This document shows positions 4,744-64,000 of a DNA stretch of 64,000 nucleotides, piece after piece; within the stretch, counting starts at the first letter, position 1, and each line of letters begins with the position of its first letter. The stretch is from Podarcis erhardii. Lineage: Eukaryota. The notes beneath the pieces were generated by a model. The model had not been told where the DNA came from. It ran no database searches and was given only the letters and a program-made list of their open reading frames with translations. The stretch is taken from the NCBI GenBank assembly GCA_964252035.1, contig OZ176201.1; one strand, given 5' to 3'. The translations under genes and the position numbers were made by a program.

Positions 4744-7700
4744 CCCGGTCCAACATTTGTCAATTGAATGGAAGACTGAAAAAATCTAAACTTGAGTCAG
4801 GACTTATTTTAAATAGCCTTTATGAGACATCAAAATATTATCAGGGTGTCCCCAAAAGCCTAGAATGCTGGTTTCCTTTTTTCAGATGTCACAAGCATCT
4901 CATGTTATTAAGTTTCCTGTGCATTGAACAATTTAATTTTAATCAATCATTTCTTTTTCTTTCTTGCTTTGTGGAGTATTGTCATCTCACGACTCTCTTT
5001 TACTGAAGAAAAGCTTTGCTTGGTGTTCAATTGANNNNNNNNNNNNNNNNNNNNNNNNNNNNNNNNNNNNNNNNNNNNNNNNNNNNNNNNNNNNNNNNNN
5101 NNNNNNNNNNNNNNNNNNNNNNNNNNNNNNNNNNNNNNNNNNNNNNNNNNNNNNNNNNNNNNNNNNNNNNNNNNNNNNNNNNNNNNNNNNNNNNNNNNNN
5201 NNACTAGTCCCAGATGGTTCTGAAGTTGCACAATTTAAGATTTAGATTAAGAGAACAATTCTACTTACAACATAACTACGAAGTCTGCTATTCCCCAAAA
5301 GAAGTCAGTTATAAATGACAAGCTCCATGGAGCCCGACTCCGGCTATCCAACACTTGACCTGTAATTAATAATAATAATAATAAATATTATCTCAAAATA
5401 ACAATGTACACATCATTATGAAGAAGAAAGCAGTATTATTCACAAAAAATGGTATTTTAGAAGTTAAAACACAAATCAGTATTATTTCCCTTTAATCATG
5501 TAGCATGGGGACTTACTGTTTGAAAAATATAAAGCCTGGGAAGCTGGCCAAGGAATGTACTTTACCAGTTGTTATATGCTTCCCTAACATAATTTACTAC
5601 AGGAGTGGAGAATCTGTGGTCCTCCAGATGTTGCTATACTGTGACTCCCATAATCTCTAATGACTATTCAGGGGTTGCTGACAGTTAAGAGACCAACAAA
5701 ACTTGGAGAATTTCCCACCCCTGGTTTACTGGAAGTAACATTTCACTTGACATAAAAATAGTCACTTAAAATAGTTGTAACTGGAGATATGGGCCCAACT
5801 GCAAATTTCTGTTTGTTCAAATCTAAGTTTACTCGTCCATTCTGCAACACACATTAATGTGTAACAAATCAAGTGGAAACATCTCCCCCCCCCACCTAAC
5901 AATGCTAGTTTCTTGCATCATAGTTGCTATGTTTCCAATGTTCAACCCATCTGGAGCAACAACCATCAGTACAGTACTATACTAGCAAATCCTTCCACCT
6001 AAAAGCTCTCTTATAGCTTAGTCCTATATATTTAAGAAGTTATGTACGGGTCAGAAAATCTTACTCCTAAAAATGAACACAGCATAGCAGCCCTAGCTTC
6101 TGTACTCCTGCACATTTTTGTTACTACAAACTACGGACAAGATACACTAGTTCTCCAGCCGAAACTGCAATCAATGCTTAATTTTTTAAATTCTTCTAGT
6201 GCTAAACCCAGTCTTGTACTTAGCAACAGGTGACCAGGAATTTCAAGCAACCCAGTAAGAAAGCTGGTGAAGGAGGGACAGATTGCTCCATCATTCCACC
6301 GTCAGCATACTTGGATAGCACAGAAAAAGAAAAATACCTTCCTTCACAACCAGAGTGAAAACTCAGTAAACCACGGTGGGAAAATATGATCCCACCTCTC
6401 CACCAGCAGTTCCCTTGATAGAAATGTTTTGTTTGTTTTTAATCAGACTGCTAAAAGACTATAAGCTTACATTTCAGTGCTGTCTGTGAAAGAGGGAAAA
6501 TGCAAACTAGCAAGAACTACTGCAGGCTTATTAACACCCTAATAATAAAAAAGGTATTTTAATCATTAGGCTTTTTATCATTGTTATTAGATTTCTCCCA
6601 TTCCCCAAAAGCACTAATCAAACCACAATTACCTGCTAGTGTCAGCACTGAGAACGCAAATCAATGACCATTTAAGTCAAGTATATTATTCTTTAAGAAC
6701 GTATAGAGTTGAGTTCTAATTTGCTGAGCAATAGTCAAGGTTCAGAGAACCAACACACATTAGGTAGATCAATTGAATAGTTACTCTGAAATGCTATTTG
6801 TACAGCTTAATCCTATGCTTACTTCAACAGAGTTCAACAGAGTTTAAGATTATCACCTACTGCTAACATGAAGCAGAGGAGCCAAAAGTAATTCCACCCC
6901 AAATTTGTAAATTAAGGCATATAAACAATTTCTTTCTTCTGGGGCGACAGTCCAAATTAGGAGGCAGAAGAATGGTTTGAGATGGCAAACCAAGCAATTA
7001 AAAATATGAATCGAAATCTAGTTAAAACTGCATTGGCCGTGAGCCAGAATTTATCAGAAGAGGTATGTACTGGGTTGACACCTGCAATGATAATCATATT
7101 CCTGTTTCTAACCTTATAGGTGATTTACAGACCAAGGCAGTTCTTTGTGCATCTGAATAATGACTTCGAGGTGCCCACAAGGCGATTTAATTATCCCGCT
7201 TTTGAAAAAGAAAACAGGCTTTTAATCCGCACGAAGCCATTCGCCCGGGTTCTTTCGGAGTTACCCTTTGAAAAACAACCTCAAGCCCTGTCATACGAAC
7301 ATGACAACCCTTTCAGTGCATCTTTTCACAGACAGGAACAGCAGGAATTATGTAAGTTTATTCAGCAACTATGAAAACACTACTGGCAGCCTTCCGGATC
7401 TACCAGGTTGCAGAAAGCGTGATCTTGCGTAGGGGCCTCGATCTACACCACCTCCACTACTTCCAATACAATAGGAGCAGAAAAAGAGAGGATCAGGCAT
7501 AAATTTTCCTCTGCCCCATGGGCGTAGCCGGGGGGGGGGCAGCTGCCTCCCTAAATCAAGAAAATAAAAATACTTAACTAACCAATTGCGCTGCAGATAA
7601 CTCTGTTCTACCCTCCCCAACATAAAGGCTGCCGCCCTAAAATAAATCATGGCTATCCCCATGCTCTGCCCCACTCCCACCCCATAATAAAGGTTCCCTC

Positions 7701-8110: not shown

Positions 8111-8475
8111 TGATGGGGTGTGTTTGTGTGCCAGATTCAATATGAGAAGCTGAGCAGTGTGTGGGGAGTTCATAGAAGTCTGGTCAAAATGGCACCTAAG
8201 GACTGCAAACTGGGTAGCCTGCACATGAGAAGCTGGAACCAGAAAAAAACAAGCTTCCAGGTGTTAAGGGGTTACACTGGAGCATTCTTGGTGCATTGTC
8301 TTTATGGTTCTGTAAGCTAGAAAGAACTAATAAGCATAACCATGGAGGAAAAGGCAAGAGCGAAAGGATGAAAAGTGTAGAAGTCTAAGCAAAAGCAATT
8401 ATATGATTTCATGCCAATAGAGGAGATCATTTGTGTTGGATAGGTTGGCCCCCCAAGAAGAATACAGGCCCAGGG

Positions 8476-9481
8476 AAACTAAAATCCAAGGTTCAAGACT
8501 GGTTACATTATTATCAGATAAATGAGACTTTTAAGCAGGACAGGAAACTAGGATTTCAGAAGGAGAGGTCAAAATTGGAAACAGAATTGTTAGAGACCAA
8601 TACTAAGAATCTGTCTAAAATGTATAACTTGTTGCTGAAATGGAATACACAGGATGAAACGGTTAAATCAGCTATGATCAAATGGGCACAAGACTTAGGT
8701 CATGATATTATGTTTGCTGACTGGGAACAGTTATGGACCACAGGCCTTAAATTTACGGCATGTAGTGCCTTGAAAGAAAACATAATGAAAATGATCTATA
8801 GGTGGTACATGACCCCAGTCAAGCTTGCAAAGATATACCATTTGCCCAATAATAAATGCTGGAAATGTAACGAATGTGAAGGAACTTTCTACCATCTTTG
8901 GTGGACCTGCCCAAAGATTAAGGCCTACTGGGAAATGATCTATAATGAAATTAAGAAAATCCTTAAGTGGACATTTGCAAAGAAACCGGAGGCTTTTCTC
9001 TTGGGCATGGTCGGCCAATTGGTACCAATGAAAGATAGGACATTCTTTATGTACGCAACTACAGCAGCAAGAATCCTTTTGGCAAAGTATTGGAAGATGC
9101 AAGAATTACCTACTCTGGAAGAATGGCAGACGAAGGTGACTGAATTTATGGGACTGGCAGAGATGACCGGCAGAATCCGTGATCAGAGGAGAGAGACAGT
9201 GGAAGAGGACTGGGAAAAATTCAAAATATATTTTAAGAACTGCTGTAAAATTTCAGACTGACAAAATGTCAAGGGGTAAGAAACAGAGAATTACAGCTGT
9301 AAATGTTTAAGTTAAGAAAACCTGAGGGAAGTTAAATATAAAAATGGAATGAAGGATTACTAAAAAATTGGAAACAAGGGTGCAGTGAAGGGGAGGTATG
9401 GGGAAGTCATGTGTTGTTTGTGTATGTTTTTTTTGGTGTTTTAGTTTATGAAAATTAATAAAAATTATTTAAAAAAAAAAA
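8476..9481 (+). mobile_element. 5'-truncated L1/Tx1-clade LINE: ORF2 C-terminus, 3' UTR and poly(A)
   Basis: Open frame 8476-9261 with a CCHC knuckle CWKCNECEGTFYHLWWTC; AATAAA 9457-9462; A-tail; perfect 18-bp TSD AAGAATACAGGCCCAGGG (8458-8475, 9482-9499). Confidence 0.93.
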
Positions 9482-15300: not shown

Positions 15301-18300
15301 GTAGTCTTATGAGTTCACCTAAAAGACATTTGGCTGCAAAAGCTGGGAAAAGGAGGAGCTGTGAGTACAAGGTTGGGAGGCCAAAGATTGGAAAGCGCAG
15401 TGAAAATAAGTTCCAGGAGGTAGGGAAGAAATGAGAAATCCAGAGTGACCAAAGTTCTCCCTTAAACATAGCATATGATGGAAAAAGGCACGCCAGAGGA
15501 AATGCAATTTGCCAAGATACAGGAATGCTACAGGGTCTGGGCCTGAACGCTCTAATGTGGCAGCGAGGAAAGCAGTAAAGGCACGGACCAAACTCCATTA
15601 CTACACGGAAACTGGCCGTGTGATGGACAGATAAATTCCTTGTAGGCCTGTTTTTGTTTTTTCATCTGAGCAGACTTTAAAGAAGTGCTTCATATGTTAT
15701 ACACAGAAGGTTTGCTTGATAAATGTGAGGGGAAATATCTGTTTTGGCGTTTAGTTAAGAGGGTGAATTTAAAACAAATTGTAAACACTTTTCAAAGCCA
15801 GGAATGTGAGAAGCTGCCTTATACCAAGTCAGACCATTGTTCCATCTAGCTGAGGAGTGCCAACACGGACTGGCAGTGACTCTCCAGGGTTTCAGGCAAG
15901 AACCTTTCCCCATCCGACTTGAAGCCACAGAAGACTGAACCTACAACCTTTTGAAAATTTGAACTAGCACTGAAAACACCTTCCAAATACAATGCAGTAA
16001 TTTGTCTCATAGCCAGTTCCCCTGCTAACCTGTGGTGTAGGTTTCTGTTCAGCAAATCTGTGCTTGCTTCAGTAGCAGACTGGCAGCCAGAGCAAATCCC
16101 ACAAACAAGGTGTTGTAATATGTTGCCACTGGTTTGCCACCACAAGCAACCCAGCTACCACATTATGCACCAGCTGCAAGGATAGCTCCACATAGAGCAC
16201 AGTGCACTAATACACATTTGAGGTTGCCAATGCATGGACACTAGAGGACACCTGTGATTCCAGTGACAGTGATGGATCTAGGAGCACCTAACATTATCTT
16301 ATATTGCACACATTAATGTGTGTGCGCACGCAGCCCTTGTGAGTGGCAAAAGAATCCCCAATGCTATGTGTGAATCTGAATCACAGATAAATCGTTAATG
16401 GAATTATGCTTTGGTATGGAAAATACGTAAGATATGAGCACCCATGCTTAGTGAAGTCTAAGCACACCAGTTTAACATTTGCCTAAATTCAGATTCCATG
16501 TGCTCCGATTCCTTGAATGATGACGGTATGCAACATAAAGTAGCCGTTATTGACCCAGTTTTGTTTTTTTAAAAATGTAGTTCAAGCCCTTGGGCCAGAT
16601 TGTCTTTTGAATGAGTCAGTACATTTTAATTCTGGAATTTTTTTAAATGGTGCTAAAACACTTTTAAGGTCAGCAAATTAAGCAAAACATAATACGAAAT
16701 GCAGCACTACCTGGCGCAGAGTCCATAGTAGATATCCATAGGAAACCAAGATGGCAGCGAACGGAATTGTAAAGCAGAATAGAAAGTAGCAGACAATATA
16801 GGAAACATTAATAGGGTCACTGTTGTACCAGTCCGGAGCACAGGAGGTCATGACGCCTTCCATCTGGTATCCTCCCCAACCAAAAAGAGGGGGAGTGTTC
16901 CAAACGAGAGACCAGACCCAGGACGCAGCAACTCCAATCATGGCTTTCCTGGTGGTAAAAGTAAGTGTTCCCATAGGCTTGCCGATCACAATCGCACGGT
17001 CTATAGCTATCACTGCTATGGTACATAAAGCCACAATGCCTGCAATTGAAGTGAAAATATGTTATTCATTCCTTTTAATATTAAGAATATTACACAAACT
17101 GTATCACAACTGGTACTTTTGAATTTCTGAAGAGCCTCAGTGCATTCAAATCCTTACCTTTCTAGGGAGCCAGCATGAGGAATTTGCAACATTCTGCTGT
17201 AGCTTTGAATTACATCCTTCACAATAAATCTTCCTTCCATTGACAACATTACTTTCAACTAGTGTCTACTGGATCAGGGATGGGGAACCTGTGTGGCCCT
17301 CCAAGTGCTGTTGTACCACAGCTCCAATCATCCCCTGACCATTGGCCATTGACTTGTGCTAGTGGGAGTTTGGGGTCAAGCAACATTTGGAAGGTCACAG
17401 GTTCCACACTCCAATATCATCACCTGATTCTTCTACTTCTTATTTATTAAAATTGTCCATTGCTTTATCTTGCCCAAGGCAACCCAAATCAATTTGCAAG
17501 CAAGCAAACAAAAGCCACATAGGTATATTAAAACCAGGGAGAAAATACATTGAAAACATCCCCCCACCTCTCTCACTTCTAAAAGGCCATGGAAAAGGGA
17601 CAAAGGCCTGGTTATAGAGGGATGTTTTTGGCTGCCATCTAAAGATGTATAATAATGGCACCAGGCAAGCCACCCTGGGGAGAGCATTCCACACAAAGCA
17701 TTCCACACCCATTCCACATTCCTCTTGTGGAGGGGGCACATGAAGAAGGGCCTCAGATGATGATTGTAGGGTCCGGGTTGGTCCTTGACGTATTGCACTC
17801 CTGAGCTATTTAAGGCTTTATCATTCTAAACTAGCACTTTGAATTGGGCTGGGAAACTAGTTGGCAGACAGTGCAATTGGGCCAGGATCGGTGCTACAAC
17901 CTGGCCACTGAATTCTGCTGTCTTTAAAGGCAGTCCCATGCATAGCATGTTGAAGTAATCTAACTTAGGGGTTACCAGAACTCAGAAACAGACTAAGTGC
18001 TAATATATGCAACATTCAGGAAATTTAGTTTGGTCACATTTAATTTTAAATGGAGTTGCCCCACTTCCAAAGTTAAGTAGATTAGTTAAAAGAGAGAGCC
18101 AGGGAAGTTAGATTTCTTCAGCAAGCTTGGTAGTTATTTAAAAATCATTAATATAGACACAGAGATAAAATGTATCTAGTAAATTTAGAAAGGTACCAAT
18201 AATTCCAATAAGATACAAGTATGCTTAACAAGCAGAGTCCAGAAAGCTATAAAAGGCAAAAAGGGCATCTGTAAAAGAGAAAGTTTTGCCAAAATGAGAA

Positions 18301-25200: not shown

Positions 25201-25587
25201 TAGCATCTAGCTCCTTTCTAACTTATGATACAACAAATCAGTTTTAGACAAGTACTCACCAAAAAATGCCATAGAAAAGCCTTCGGTGACACAGCCAATT
25301 CTACCCAGGTTGTAATACCCAACAGCATTTGTTTCTACATTCAGAGTTCCTCCCAACAAGGCTGCTCCAAGGTCTGCTATGGCTAAATTGACCAGGGAAT
25401 AGTTAATTGGCTGACGAAGCTGTCTGTACTTAATAGTTACTGCAATAACGGTTGTATTTAGAATTACTGATAAAGTGCAAGATATTGCCATGATAATTGC
25501 AATTATGGTGTAACCAATACGAGGCATCAAGACCACTCTTCCTGTGCTGACATTCACTGACAAGGGATTGGTGTCCAGAGAATCCAT
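12220..25587 (-). CDS. parapinopsin: Parapinopsin (pineal/parietal-eye opsin), complete spliced CDS join(25260-25587, 16711-17039, 14550-14792, 12220-12357); 345 aa
   Basis: 328+329+243+138 = 1038 nt, open, all introns GT-AG. 7TM opsin with Lys284 in LAKSSTFYNP (bovine K296), C99/C176 disulfide, E102 (113), E170 (181) and NKQFR. The N-terminus MDSLDTN...MPRIGYTIIAIIM matches remembered iguanid parapinopsin. The 3-intron structure lacks visual-opsin intron 2, as expected for parapinopsin. Confidence 0.93.
13480..13790 (+). mobile_element. Sauria SINE (divergent subfamily with an internal 3' deletion)
   Basis: GGGACGTGGGTGGTGCTGTGGG head; GGGGTACCTTTACCTT tail; lacks the AGAGTYGG.CACGACT segment. 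Confidence 0.88.
13985..14003 (+). promoter_or_regulatory. CTCF-like motif in parapinopsin intron 3
   Basis: AGCCACAAGGTGGCAGCAT closely matches the CTCF core CCASYAGRKGGCRS (one deviation). Confidence 0.45.
14550..14792 (-). CDS. parapinopsin: Parapinopsin exon 3 (ICL3, TM6, TM7 with the retinal lysine at 14600-14598)
   Basis: Acceptor TTTTAACTAG|GTT; VAKVG...CWLPYA...LAKSSTFYNPVIYIFMNKQ; donor CAG|GTGAGT. Confidence 0.95.
15129..15270. mobile_element. Degraded Charlie/MER5-like hAT MITE
   Basis: GACTACAACTCCCATCATTCTTGACCGTTGGCCATGCTGGC core shared with the other copies. Confidence 0.6.
16711..17039 (-). CDS. parapinopsin: Parapinopsin exon 2 (TM3 to TM5)
   Basis: Acceptor TTGCAG|GC; IVALCTIAVIAIDRA...EGVMTSCAPDW...LWTLRQ; donor CAG|GTAGTG. 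Confidence 0.95.
17276..17412. mobile_element. Degraded Charlie/MER5-like hAT MITE
   Basis: CAGGGATGGGGAACCTGTG...CCCTCCA...CAGGTTCCACAC. Confidence 0.6.
17440..17990 (-). mobile_element. L2 LINE 3' fragment (degraded)
   Basis: Resembles the L2 ORF2 end and 3' UTR; similar to 44725-45020. Confidence 0.55.
18560..18830 (+). mobile_element. Old CR1 fragment
   Basis: CTGGAATACTGCATACAGTTT...GAAGAAGGA...TTTAGTGTAGAGAAGAGG, matching the CR1 ORF2 C-terminus (LEYCVQF...LEKRRL). Confidence 0.55.
20714..20849. mobile_element. Charlie/Buster-type hAT MITE, 136 bp
   Basis: TIRs CAGGCTTCCTCAACC and GGTTGAGGAAGCCTG; perfect TSD GCCTAAAC (20706-20713, 20850-20857). Confidence 0.9.
21141..21354 (+). mobile_element. 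tRNA-derived MIR/CORE-like SINE (Squam3-type)
   Basis: A box GTGGTGCAGTGGTTAGAG; B box GGTTCATACCC; core GGGTGACTTTGGACCAGTCAC; AT-rich tail. Confidence 0.75.
23554..24201. mobile_element. hAT MITE whose left TIR is interrupted by a Sauria SINE
   Basis: CAGAGGCGTAGC|AAGG and CCTTCCTACGCCTCTG; perfect TSD GATAATAA (23546-23553, 24202-24209); internal inverted repeat with arms of about 55 bp. Confidence 0.85.
23563..23916 (+). mobile_element. Sauria SINE, near full length
   Basis: GCGGGTGGCGCTGTGGGTTAAACC...GGTTCGAATCCCC...CCCTTTACCTTTACC; short TAGC duplication at both junctions. Confidence 0.93.
25260..25587 (-). CDS. parapinopsin: Parapinopsin exon 1 (TM1 to mid-TM3)
   Basis: ATG 25587-25585; ends ...EGFSMAFF G|GTGAGT, phase 1. 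Confidence 0.95.
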
Positions 25588-58628: not shown

Positions 58629-58735
58629 ATGCTGCCTGTGGCTGATGGGAGCTGGAGTTCAACAGGCTAGATTATTTATTTATTTCAATAAATTATTTAG
58701 GGCAAGTCCTTATGAGATTATATGTGTATGTATAA

Positions 58736-59238
58736 AGACAGCATCTTAAAAAGCAGAGACATCACCTTGCCGACAAAGGTCCGTATAGTTAAAGCTATGG
58801 TTTTCCCAGTAGTGATGTATGGAAGTGAGAGCTGGACCATCAAGAAGGCTGATTGCCGAAGAATTGATGCTTTTGAGTTATGGTGCTGAAGGAGACTCTT
58901 GAGAGTCCCATGGACTGCAAGAAGATCAAACCTTTCCATTCTGAAGGAAATCAGTCCTGAGTGCTCACTGGAAGGACAGATCGTGAAGCTGAGGCTCCAA
59001 TACTTTGGCCACCTCATGAGAAGAGAAGACTCCCTGGAAAAGACCCTGACGTTGAGAAAGATGGAGGGCACAAGGAGAAGGGGACGACAGAGGACGAGAT
59101 GGTTGGACAGTGTTCTTGAAGCTACCAGCATGAGTTTGACCAAACTGCGGGAGGCAGTGGAAGACAGGAGTGCCTGGCGTGCTCTGGTCCATGGGGTCAC
59201 GAAGAGTCGGACATGACGAAATGACTAAACAACAACAA
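58736..59238 (+). mobile_element. Bov-B (RTE) LINE, 5'-truncated 3' end
   Basis: DSILKSRDITLPTKVRIVKAMVFPVVMYGSESWTIKK...LRLQYFGHLMRR...LVHGVTKSRT; one nonsense TGA at 58887-58889; (CAA)n tail. Confidence 0.95.
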
Positions 59239-62200: not shown

Positions 62201-62357
62201 AAACATTCACAGGGAGGAAGGGTGCAAAAATACAGCATTTGCCTAATCAATATGTAAGACTCCAAGTGATGTCAGGGAACTTGCATAGATTGACAGCATA
62301 ATCAGGAATCTTTGGACCCTGCATAGTCACTCTGCATAGGGTGACTAACTGGGACTA

Positions 62358-63807
62358 CAGTGGTGCCCCGCAAGACGAATGCCTCGCAAGACGGAAAACC
62401 CGCTAGACGAAAGGGTTTTCCGTTTTGGAGGCGCTTCGCAAAACGAATTTCCCTATGGGCTTGCTTCGCAAGAAGAAAGCCAATAGGGAAATCTCCGGGG
62501 ACCTCTTTTAAATGCTAGCGGTGGGGAGCAAAGCCTTTTCCCCCCCTCCAGCCTTCAGAAGAGGTCCAGGAAGGCCGGCGGGGGCCGAAAGGCTTTGCTC
62601 CCCACCGCCAGCATTTTAAAAGCAGTCCGGGATAGCAGGGAAGCGCTTCCCGCTATCCCGGATGGCTTTTGAAGGCAGGCAGGGGGGAGCAAAGACTTTT
62701 GCCCCCCGCCCGCCTTCAGAAGAGGTCCTGGACCTCTTCTGAAGGCGGGCGGGGGGCAAAAGTCTTTGCTCCCCCCTGCCTGCTTTCCGGGAGAGCGGAG
62801 AAACGCTTTCTCCGCTTTCCCGGACGGCTTTTGAAGGCAGGCAGCGGGGGGGGGGGGGAGCAAAGACTTTCGCCCCCCACCGGCCTTCAGAAGAGTCCTG
62901 GACCTCTTCTGAAGGCGGGCGGGGGGCAAAAGTCTTTGCTCCCCCCCGCCGCCGCCTGCCTTCCCGGGAGAGCGGAGAAACGCAGCGCTGCGTTTCTCCG
63001 CTCTCCCGGGAAGGCAGGCAGGGGGGACAAAGACTTTCGCCCCCCACCGGCCTTCAGAAGAGGTCCAGGACCTCTTCTGAAGGCCGGTGGGGGGCGAAAG
63101 TCTTTGTCTCCCCTGCCTGCCTTCCGGGGGCTTTTAAATCGCCCCGGGACAGCGGAAAATTCCTCCGCTGCCCCGGGGCGATTTTAAAATGCTGGCGGGC
63201 AGCAGCGCTGCCGCCCGCCAGCATTTTAAGATCACCCCAGACAGCGGAGGAATTTTCCGCTGTCCCAGGGTTTTTAAAATGCTGGTGGGCGGCAGCGAAG
63301 GCTTCGCTGCCGCCCGCCAGCATTTTAAAATCGCCCCGGGAGCGGAGAAGTCTCCGCTGTCTGGGGTGATCTTAAAATGCTGGCAGGCGGCAGCGCTGCT
63401 GCCCGCGAAGCCTTCGCTGCCGCCCACCAGCATTTTAAAAACCCCGGGACAGCGGAAAATTCCTCCGCTGTCTGGGGTGATCTTAAAATGCTGGCGGGCG
63501 GCAGCGCTGCTGCCCGCCAGCATTTTAAAATCGCCCCGGGGCAGCGGAGGAATTTTCCGCTGTCCCGGGGCGATTTAAAAGCCCCCGGGAAGGCAGGCAG
63601 GGGGGACAAAGACTTTCGCCCCCCACCGGCCTTCAGAAGAGGTCGGGGGACAGACTGTCCCCGGACCTGGTCTGAAGGCGGTTTCCATAGGAACGCATTA
63701 ATTGATTTTTAATGCATTCCTATGGGAAACCGTGCTTCGCAAGACGAAAAACTCGCAAGACAAAAGACTTGCGGAACGAATTAATTTCGTCTTGCGAGGC
63801 ACCACTG
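62358..63807. mobile_element. Tigger/pogo-type MITE, 1450 bp, with an internal nested-palindrome array
   Basis: TIRs CAGTGGTGCCCCGCAAGACGAA and TTCGTCTTGCGAGGCACCACTG; TA TSDs (62356-62357, 63808-63809); subterminal CGCAAGACGA repeats. Confidence 0.92.
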
Positions 63808-64000
63808 TAATGCCTAATCTGAATGCACACAATTGCCACTGTTTACTGTGCTCAATTATCTGCTCAGTAGAAATTAGCCATACATTCTACATTTATTGCC
63901 TCAAAGTAATTAGTGATGTCCACATTTGTCTTTGTTTTCATATTATATTTCCTGGGAATTATTGAATTAGCTATTACTGACTCCCCCCACCCCAATCAGA

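What the first reader, a model, noticed from the sequence alone, without database searches (positions are those of the whole stretch)
62358..63807. Self-similar palindrome MITE: hairpins nested inside a larger inverted repeat
Between intact Tigger-type TIRs and TA TSDs, about 1.15 kb (62507-63680) consists almost entirely of stacked GC- and CpG-rich hairpins built from a few modules. One module has 54-bp perfect arms around a single T at 62729 and recurs near 62832-62963 and 63011-63125. Another forms a perfect spacerless 66-bp palindrome at 62954-63019. A third is the TTTTAAAATGCTGGCGGG...CCCGCCAGCATTTTAA module. At larger scale, about 63070-63308 and about 63405-63645 are near-identical inverted arms of roughly 240 bp, each made of smaller hairpins. 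Even the last module carries a mini-hairpin (GGGGACAG-A-CTGTCCCC). Ordinary tandem slippage does not give this pattern. Inference: repeated fold-back or template-switch synthesis, possibly during gap repair after transposition. It should extrude cruciforms and yield long dsRNA if transcribed. CpG retention implies youth or hypomethylation.
Basis: partly seen in the sequence, partly recalled or inferred. Interest (0 to 1): 0.75.

Follow-up and report, generated by a model that had tools for sequence, protein, structure and literature searches.

The report
Lizard MITE with expanding hairpin array
A young 1.45-kb cut-and-paste transposon remnant in a wall-lizard genome carries about 17 stacked GC-rich hairpins, including a 576-base near-perfect palindrome. 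Shorter relatives of the same family show that this hairpin array grows and rearranges from copy to copy, so it is an unusual variant of a known kind of repeat-carrying mini-transposon.

Summary
This covers the TA duplications, the 22-nt terminal inverted repeats, the 54-nt perfect arms around T62729, the perfect 66-bp palindrome, the mini-hairpin and the ~240-nt inverted arms. Those arms differ by 2 substitutions and 1 indel.

The interior parses as A1 h A2 h A3 h A4 | B2 B1 B2 B1 B2 B1 B2 B1 B2 | A5. All of it is variants of one two-hairpin unit.

Two Podarcis muralis "uncharacterized proteins" are read-through translations of other copies of the family. They have the same backbone, modules and right-hand mini-hairpin junction, but interiors of only about 190 and 460 nt. 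So the array is a family trait of variable length, and this copy is an expanded one.

Growth was mixed:
- **Direct duplication:** 168- and 111-nt periods, and the A3 recombinant hairpin.
- **Inverted copying:** flipped loops, arms 99% alike against 67-83% between direct neighbours, and a re-symmetrised h3.

An assembly artefact and the "Tigger" label remain untested.

Verdict: new variant of tandem-repeat-containing MITEs, moderate interest. The scan had flagged similar TE-borne hairpin arrays elsewhere in this genome.

The parts
62356..62357 (.). Left TA target-site duplication
   Evidence: Read directly in the sequence
62358..62379 (+). Left terminal inverted repeat (22 nt)
   Evidence: exact pattern match, no match in any shuffle
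62380..62499 (+). Left backbone: five direct CGCAAGACGAA-like subterminal motifs (candidate transposase-binding sites, an inference) and one small hairpin
   Evidence: (families D10, D11)
62500..62621 (.). Hairpin A1: diverged, with a B1-like base and an A-like core, so it links the two module types
   Evidence: (I14)
62622..62666 (.). Short hairpin h1
62667..62791 (.). Hairpin A2: 54-nt perfect arms around T62729, arms 98% alike
   Evidence: (I6)
62783..62830 (.). Short hairpin h2
62832..62963 (.). Hairpin A3: recombinant, with an A4-type left arm and an A2-type right arm, plus a run of 13 G
   Evidence: (I11, D9)
62954..63019 (.). Hairpin h3: perfect spacerless 66-bp palindrome, derived relative to h1 and h2
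63005..63129 (.). Hairpin A4: 62-nt arms, 97% complementary
   Evidence: (I5)
63069..63305 (+). Left arm of the large palindrome (A4 right arm, B2.1, B1.1, B2.2, left half of B1.2)
   Evidence: (I1, I4)
63306..63406 (.). Asymmetric mosaic centre. 63352-63406 is a 98% direct copy of 63463-63517 and a 98% inverted copy of 63195-63249. A 12-nt insertion lies at about 63396-63407.
   Evidence: (I7, D6)
63407..63644 (-). Right arm of the large palindrome: 2 substitutions and 1 indel against the left arm
63295..63517 (+). Direct 111-nt duplication (2.0 copies, 90% matches) that overlaps the palindrome centre
63584..63681 (.). Hairpin A5: full left arm, loop replaced by the mini-hairpin 63646-63662, right arm cut to 19 nt. 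The same junction is present in two other family copies.
63682..63785 (+). Right backbone with one hairpin and CGCAAGAC-type motifs
63786..63807 (-). Right terminal inverted repeat
63808..63809 (.). Right TA target-site duplication

Best explanation
This is a recently inserted copy of a non-autonomous Tc1/mariner-superfamily transposon family of Podarcis lizards. The family has a backbone of roughly 280 bp (TA duplication, 22-nt TIRs, reiterated subterminal motifs) enclosing an array of a two-hairpin unit: a long hairpin (A or B1) followed by a short one (h or B2). The number of units differs between copies. This copy has grown to about 17 hairpins (1174 nt).

Growth ran along two routes, both favoured by the hairpins themselves. 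The first is direct duplication by unequal exchange or slippage, at periods of 168 and 111 nt. The second is template switching or fold-back copying at hairpin loops. That route writes the reverse complement of one side onto the other. It re-symmetrises single hairpins, flips loops, and most recently produced the 576-nt palindrome.

Shown: the anatomy, its variation between copies, and the footprints of both direct and inverted copying. Inferred: the enzymology (replication-fork switching versus repair after excision) and any consequence, such as cruciforms, hairpin RNA or CpG-island-like behaviour.
For: - Ends and target duplication.
- Unit homology: A1 has a B1-type base with an A-type core, and h and B2 align as one hairpin family.
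- Other copies: P0001 and P0002 are Podarcis muralis UniProt entries with no Pfam domain. They map collinearly onto the six-frame translation of this element, from backbone through modules and the mini-hairpin junction to backbone. They span about 460 and 190 nt of interior, against 1174 nt here.
- Direct duplication: TRF periods of 168 and 111 nt. A3 combines an A4-type left arm with an A2-type right arm.
- Inverted copying: arms 99% alike against 67-83% direct identity between B units. The B2 loops alternate in orientation. The arms of A2 and of A4 each share 3-4 diagnostic differences. 11 of 26 stem pairs in the h/B2 family carry changes on both sides, and 0 of 500 shuffles reach the observed cell count or covariation score; 3 of 500 reach the count of 11 pairs. 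h3 is perfectly symmetric where h1 and h2 are not.
- Mechanism precedent: replication template switching creates and repairs perfect stems (PMC8794818).
Against: - No reads and no genomic DNA of other copies could be examined. The copy comparison therefore rests on two predicted proteins, which could be spliced models.
- The large palindrome could in principle be an assembly product.
- Mirrored differences between arms could also come from arm-to-arm gene conversion or from selection for pairing, rather than from template switching.
- The order of events is reconstructed from a single copy.
Confidence: 0.68

Rival explanations
1. This is a pure tandem minisatellite. A palindromic unit was amplified only by slippage or unequal crossing-over, and every larger inverted repeat is the automatic mirror symmetry of such an array.
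For: TRF finds 168-, 111- and 92-nt periods. The lower-identity inverted pairs (I2, I3 and I13, at 75-85%) are what this model predicts. A3 is a simple crossover product.
Against: The mirrored arms are 99% alike over about 237 nt, while direct neighbours are 67-83% alike. The asymmetric 13-nt B2 loops alternate in orientation instead of repeating in one orientation. The symmetric state of h3 is derived relative to h1 and h2.
Confidence: 0.08
2. This is an assembly artefact. The large palindrome, or the array length, was created by chimeric fold-back long reads or by mis-assembly of a shorter hairpin array.
For: Palindromic, GC-rich arrays are hard to sequence and assemble.
Against: The arms are not identical: they differ by two transitions, one at a CpG, and by one indel. 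The centre is an asymmetric mosaic rather than a clean fold-back. Both TIRs and both TA duplications are intact, and the flanks are unique. Shorter relatives carry the same modules.
Confidence: 0.1
3. The pairing is kept by selection for a function. Candidates are a long hairpin RNA or small-RNA precursor, or a DNA structure used in transposition or chromatin.
For: Stems stay paired through changes on both sides. An earlier follow-up on another hairpin array in this genome reported stems kept paired between two lizard species (s1-220638, not re-tested here). The gene models P0001 and P0002 hint that some copies are transcribed.
Against: Stem mismatches show no strand bias: 10 G:T against 11 A:C, plus 12 other substitution mismatches. 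No Rfam family reaches its threshold. Unit number and order differ freely between copies. Template switching yields the same covariation without any selection (PMC8794818).
Confidence: 0.12

Closest known systems
Tandem-repeat-containing MITEs (DTC84 of Donax trunculus; pearl-type elements of oysters), PMC3879986
   Same: A short TIR-bearing cassette flanks a central array of core repeats. The repeat number varies so that nearly every copy is unique. Palindromes in the repeats are proposed as hotspots for changes in array length.
   Different: Here every unit consists entirely of hairpins, and the arrays also grow by inverted copying, up to a 576-nt palindrome. The target duplication is TA rather than AA. 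No microsatellite tail is present. The host is a vertebrate, and the array is GC- and CpG-rich.
Foldback-type transposons with repeat-built arms (Drosophila FB, Tetris PMC4079207, Galileo PMC4168063)
   Same: Non-autonomous DNA transposons with modular, rearranged forms that carry internal tandem repeats and have strong fold-back potential.
   Different: In those elements the repeats lie inside very long TIRs, so the whole element folds back on itself. Here the TIRs are 22 nt and the left and right halves of the interior are not mirror images. The palindromes are internal and local.
Anolis carolinensis TcMar-N non-autonomous families (PMC3014272)
   Same: Lizard host, TA duplication, and short TIRs that begin CAGTG. 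TcMar-N9, N11 and N16 share about 11 of 15 TIR bases with this element. The authors liken the ends of N11 to those of Tigger3.
   Different: The paper's text has no occurrence of 'palindrom', 'hairpin' or 'minisatellite'. The resemblance is limited to a few TIR bases.
Template-switch mutations that create or repair hairpins (PMC8794818, PMC5453318)
   Same: A single event writes a reverse-complement copy. This can produce perfect stems, multi-base 'compensatory' changes and inverted loops.
   Different: The described events are mostly tens of bases long, in unique sequence or in RNA genes. Here the same footprint recurs at three scales (33, about 60 and about 240 nt) inside one mobile element.

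Membership tests
Tc1/mariner superfamily, non-autonomous element | TA target-site duplication | tested here: met
   TA on both sides
Tc1/mariner superfamily, non-autonomous element | Terminal inverted repeats | tested here: met
   22 nt, matching at 21 of 22 positions, unique in the window
Tc1/mariner superfamily, non-autonomous element | No transposase coding capacity | tested here: met
   The only ORFs are read-throughs of the palindromic array, and none has a Pfam hit
Tc1/mariner superfamily, non-autonomous element | Several dispersed copies with the same ends | tested here: inconclusive
   Two further copies are seen only as translated gene models of Podarcis muralis. No genomic DNA of other copies was obtainable.
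MITE in the strict sense | Small size (under about 800 bp) | tested here: not met
   This copy is 1450 bp. Relatives are inferred to be about 0.5-0.75 kb.
pogo/Tigger clade | TIR matching a Tigger consensus, and an autonomous partner with a pogo-type DDE transposase | not testable with these tools
   No TE library and no transposase in the window. The only evidence is a resemblance of 11 of 15 bases to Anolis TcMar-N11, whose ends the authors compare with Tigger3.
Tandem-repeat-containing MITEs (pearl/DTC84 type) | Central array of core repeats between TIR cassettes, with copy number varying among elements | tested here: met
Tandem-repeat-containing MITEs (pearl/DTC84 type) | Microsatellite segment at one end of the array, and AA target duplication | tested here: not met
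   No microsatellite is present, and the duplication is TA
Foldback elements | Long TIRs that make up most of the element | tested here: not met
   Left against right backbone is 55% identical beyond the first 20-22 nt. The dot plot shows no element-wide antidiagonal.
Rfam RNA families (miRNA precursors and others) | Score at or above the family gathering threshold | tested here: not met
   The best match is MIR1437 at 115.8 bits against a threshold of 168. All 171 matches are below threshold and are generic long-hairpin look-alikes.

The most novel reading that the evidence does not exclude
Wall-lizard genomes may host an ongoing hairpin-templated copying process. It would repeatedly build, lengthen and re-symmetrise GC-rich hairpin arrays inside DNA transposons of unrelated families: this element, a second 'Tigger-like' MITE and a hAT-borne 118-bp array were all flagged in the same genome. 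The result would be mobile, CpG-island-like long-hairpin loci that could feed small-RNA pathways or act as fragile or recombinogenic sites.
Probability: 0.15. Interest if true: 0.65.

Novelty: new variant of a known kind. Interest (0 to 1): 0.4.

Why it matters
The same element carries footprints of both direct and inverted copying at three length scales, and related copies preserve earlier stages. That makes the family a natural series for studying three things in a vertebrate germ line: how palindromes are born and enlarged, how 'compensatory' stem changes can arise without selection, and how transposons seed minisatellites.

There is also a practical point. At 63% GC and CpG observed/expected of 0.73 over 1.2 kb, this element would be called a CpG island, and its array can be read through as a spurious protein (two UniProt entries of another Podarcis genome). 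Annotators should mask it.

Tried and rejected
- **Word search with the B-array ORF:** no hit.
- **Word search with P0001:** only P0001 itself.
- **TIR pattern scans of metagenome and prokaryote genome collections:** one chance match each. These were a prokaryotic-looking contig, L001, with no second TIR, and a Marinobacter contig, L002. Both were rejected.
- **The search of earlier findings by sequence:** blank.
- **Rfam:** only sub-threshold hairpin look-alikes.
- **Pfam:** nothing on the array ORFs or on P0001.
- **P0003:** a marine metatranscriptome repeat protein with E about 7e-4 that does not map to the element. Rejected as chance.
- **Strand-specific RNA selection:** no G:T against A:C bias.
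- **Foldback-element classification:** rejected.
- **Array start and end in the same repeat phase:** the junctions are only 50% alike, so I keep this as a suggestion, not a result.

Full report
**Setting.** The window has vertebrate-type CpG depletion (observed/expected 0.28). Earlier notes of this scan identify the genome as a wall lizard, Podarcis. The only match in the protein searches was to Podarcis muralis entries.

**Observation.** The element runs from 62358 to 63807. It has TA on each side and 22-nt terminal inverted repeats that match at 21 of 22 positions. These repeats are found nowhere else in the 64 kb.

Each specific claim was recomputed and holds:
- 54-nt perfect arms around T62729
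- a perfect spacerless 66-bp palindrome at 62954-63019
- an 8+1+8 mini-hairpin at 63646-63662
- nine copies of the TTTTAAAATGCTGG-type module
- inverted arms 63069-63305 and 63407-63644, which differ by two transitions and one single-base indel

As single strands, the A array folds 30 standard deviations below shuffled controls and the B palindrome 57 standard deviations below. The whole element folds to -775 kcal/mol, with almost every interior base paired.

**Anatomy.** The interior reads A1 h1 A2 h2 A3 h3 A4 | B2 B1 B2 B1 B2 B1 B2 B1 B2 | A5. The A hairpins are 115-125 nt long, and h, B1 and B2 are 40-70 nt. The two halves are variants of one unit. A1 has the base of a B1 hairpin and the core of an A hairpin. 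The h and B2 hairpins align as one family. So the whole 1174 nt is a minisatellite of a two-hairpin unit, and TRF sees it with periods of 168, 111 and 92 nt.

The backbone outside the array is about 280 nt. It carries five direct CGCAAGACGAA-like motifs on the left, related motifs on the right, and a small hairpin on each side. Beyond the first 20-22 nt the two ends are only 55% alike, so this is not a foldback element.

**Other copies.** I therefore used the spurious open reading frames of the array as handles. The 172-codon frame through the A array hit a 232-residue "uncharacterized protein" of Podarcis muralis, P0001. The exhaustive search with P0001 found a second such protein of 101 residues, P0002. 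Neither has a Pfam domain (for P0001).

Sliding 9-residue windows of both proteins map, at 7-9 of 9 identities, onto the six-frame translation of this element in collinear order:
- **P0001:** left backbone, an A hairpin, B2, a B1/B2 fusion, a diverged A hairpin, the A5 junction with the mini-hairpin, right backbone.
- **P0002 (opposite strand):** right backbone, the same junction, one A hairpin, a B1-type base, then a short tail that does not map to this element (at most 5 of 9) and that I read by eye as left backbone.

The interiors they span are about 460 and 190 nt, on the assumption that the models are unspliced there. The copy in this window has stop codons in those frames and a different length, so these proteins come from other copies.

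Three things follow:
- The family has several members.
- The modules and the mini-hairpin junction belong to the family, not to this locus.
- Unit number and order are highly variable, and this copy is an expanded one.

**How the array grew: direct duplication.** The arms of A2 and A4 differ at three to four diagnostic sites. A3 has the A4-type left arm and the A2-type right arm, including 49 nt identical to A2. That is the product expected if a sequence a a' h b b' underwent one unequal exchange between the two hairpin loops, giving a a' h b a' h b b'. A second direct duplication of 111 nt spans 63295-63517.

**How the array grew: inverted copying, seen at three scales.**
- **Small scale.** Hairpins h1 and h2 share an asymmetric right flank. 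In h3, that flank, a stem mismatch and the loop are all replaced, so that 33+33 nt pair perfectly.
- **Middle scale.** The two arms of A2 agree with each other at 98%, and those of A4 at 97%. A2 and A4 agree with each other at only 90-93%, so the differences between these hairpins are mirrored. Across the six h/B2 hairpins, 11 of 26 stem pairs carry changes on both sides. None of 500 shuffles reaches the observed covariation or paired-cell count, 3 of 500 reach the count of 11 pairs, and slid registers fall to half.
- **Large scale.** The 13-nt asymmetric loops of successive B2 hairpins alternate in orientation. The arms of the 576-nt palindrome are 99% alike, while B units compared in direct orientation are 67-83% alike.

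The centre of the large palindrome (63306-63406) is not a clean turn. It holds a 12-nt insertion. It also holds a 55-nt piece that is at once a 98% direct copy of 63463-63517 and a 98% inverted copy of 63195-63249. That points to more than one switch.

These footprints match replication-linked template switching, which is known to create perfect stems, fix mismatched ones and make multi-base "compensatory" changes in one step (PMC8794818, PMC5453318). Fold-back priming at breaks gives similar inverted insertions (PMC11724301).

Stem mismatches show no strand bias: 10 G:T, 11 A:C and 12 other substitution mismatches. This argues against selection on an RNA from one strand.

**Age.** The intact duplications, the near-identical TIRs and the CpG values indicate a recent insertion and a very recent palindrome. 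CpG observed/expected is 0.61 in the A array, 0.97 in the B palindrome and above 1 in the backbone, against 0.17 in the flank. Lack of methylation cannot be separated from youth here. One of the two arm differences is a CpG transition, which is typical of biological rather than assembly change.

**Comparison with known systems.** MITEs with internal tandem arrays of variable length are established, with palindromes suspected as the unstable points (DTC84 and pearl elements, PMC3879986). Foldback transposons with repeat-built arms are established too (Tetris, PMC4079207). This element shares the cassette-plus-array logic but fails the pearl-type details, which are an AA duplication and a microsatellite tail. 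It also fails the foldback definition.

The "Tigger" label rests only on TA plus a CAGTG-type TIR that resembles Anolis TcMar-N11 at 11 of 15 bases (PMC3014272). It was not testable. No Rfam family reaches threshold.

I file it as a new variant of tandem-repeat-containing MITEs. It is distinguished by all-hairpin units and by growth through inverted as well as direct copying, in a reptile.

**Limits.**
- No reads, so an assembly artefact is not excluded. I put it near 10%.
- No DNA of other copies.
- No TE library.
- The big protein search was used once, because the question of family-wide against locus-specific structure hung on a single relative.
- Nothing taken for human sequence was met, and no N stretch lies near the element.

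Noticed in passing
window 16690-17034 and 25258-25587, minus strand: Two exons of a rhodopsin-family receptor gene. Both hit Pfam 7tm_1, at E 1e-16 and 2e-9. The first exon looks opsin-like by eye. The gene lies about 37 kb from the element, so the element is probably intergenic or sits in another gene.
   Followed up: partly
UniProt A0A670HY40_PODMU (P0001) and A0A670ICL5_PODMU (P0002): Two 'uncharacterized proteins' of Podarcis muralis are translations straight through copies of this transposon family. They are annotation artefacts, though they hint that those copies are transcribed.
   Followed up: yes
window 8431-9261 (+) and 58718-59216 (both strands): Long ORFs that look by eye like retrotransposon remnants: a LINE ORF2 tail with a Cys-rich motif, and an RTE/BovB-like C-terminus. 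Neither has a Pfam hit at E 0.001.
   Followed up: partly
window about 5000-5200: A run of 361 N, an assembly gap or masked stretch.
   Followed up: no
window 62846-62858: A run of 13 G in the left arm of hairpin A3 faces only 7 C in the right arm. This is a homopolymer expansion inside a stem, and it could be a polishing error or real slippage.
   Followed up: no
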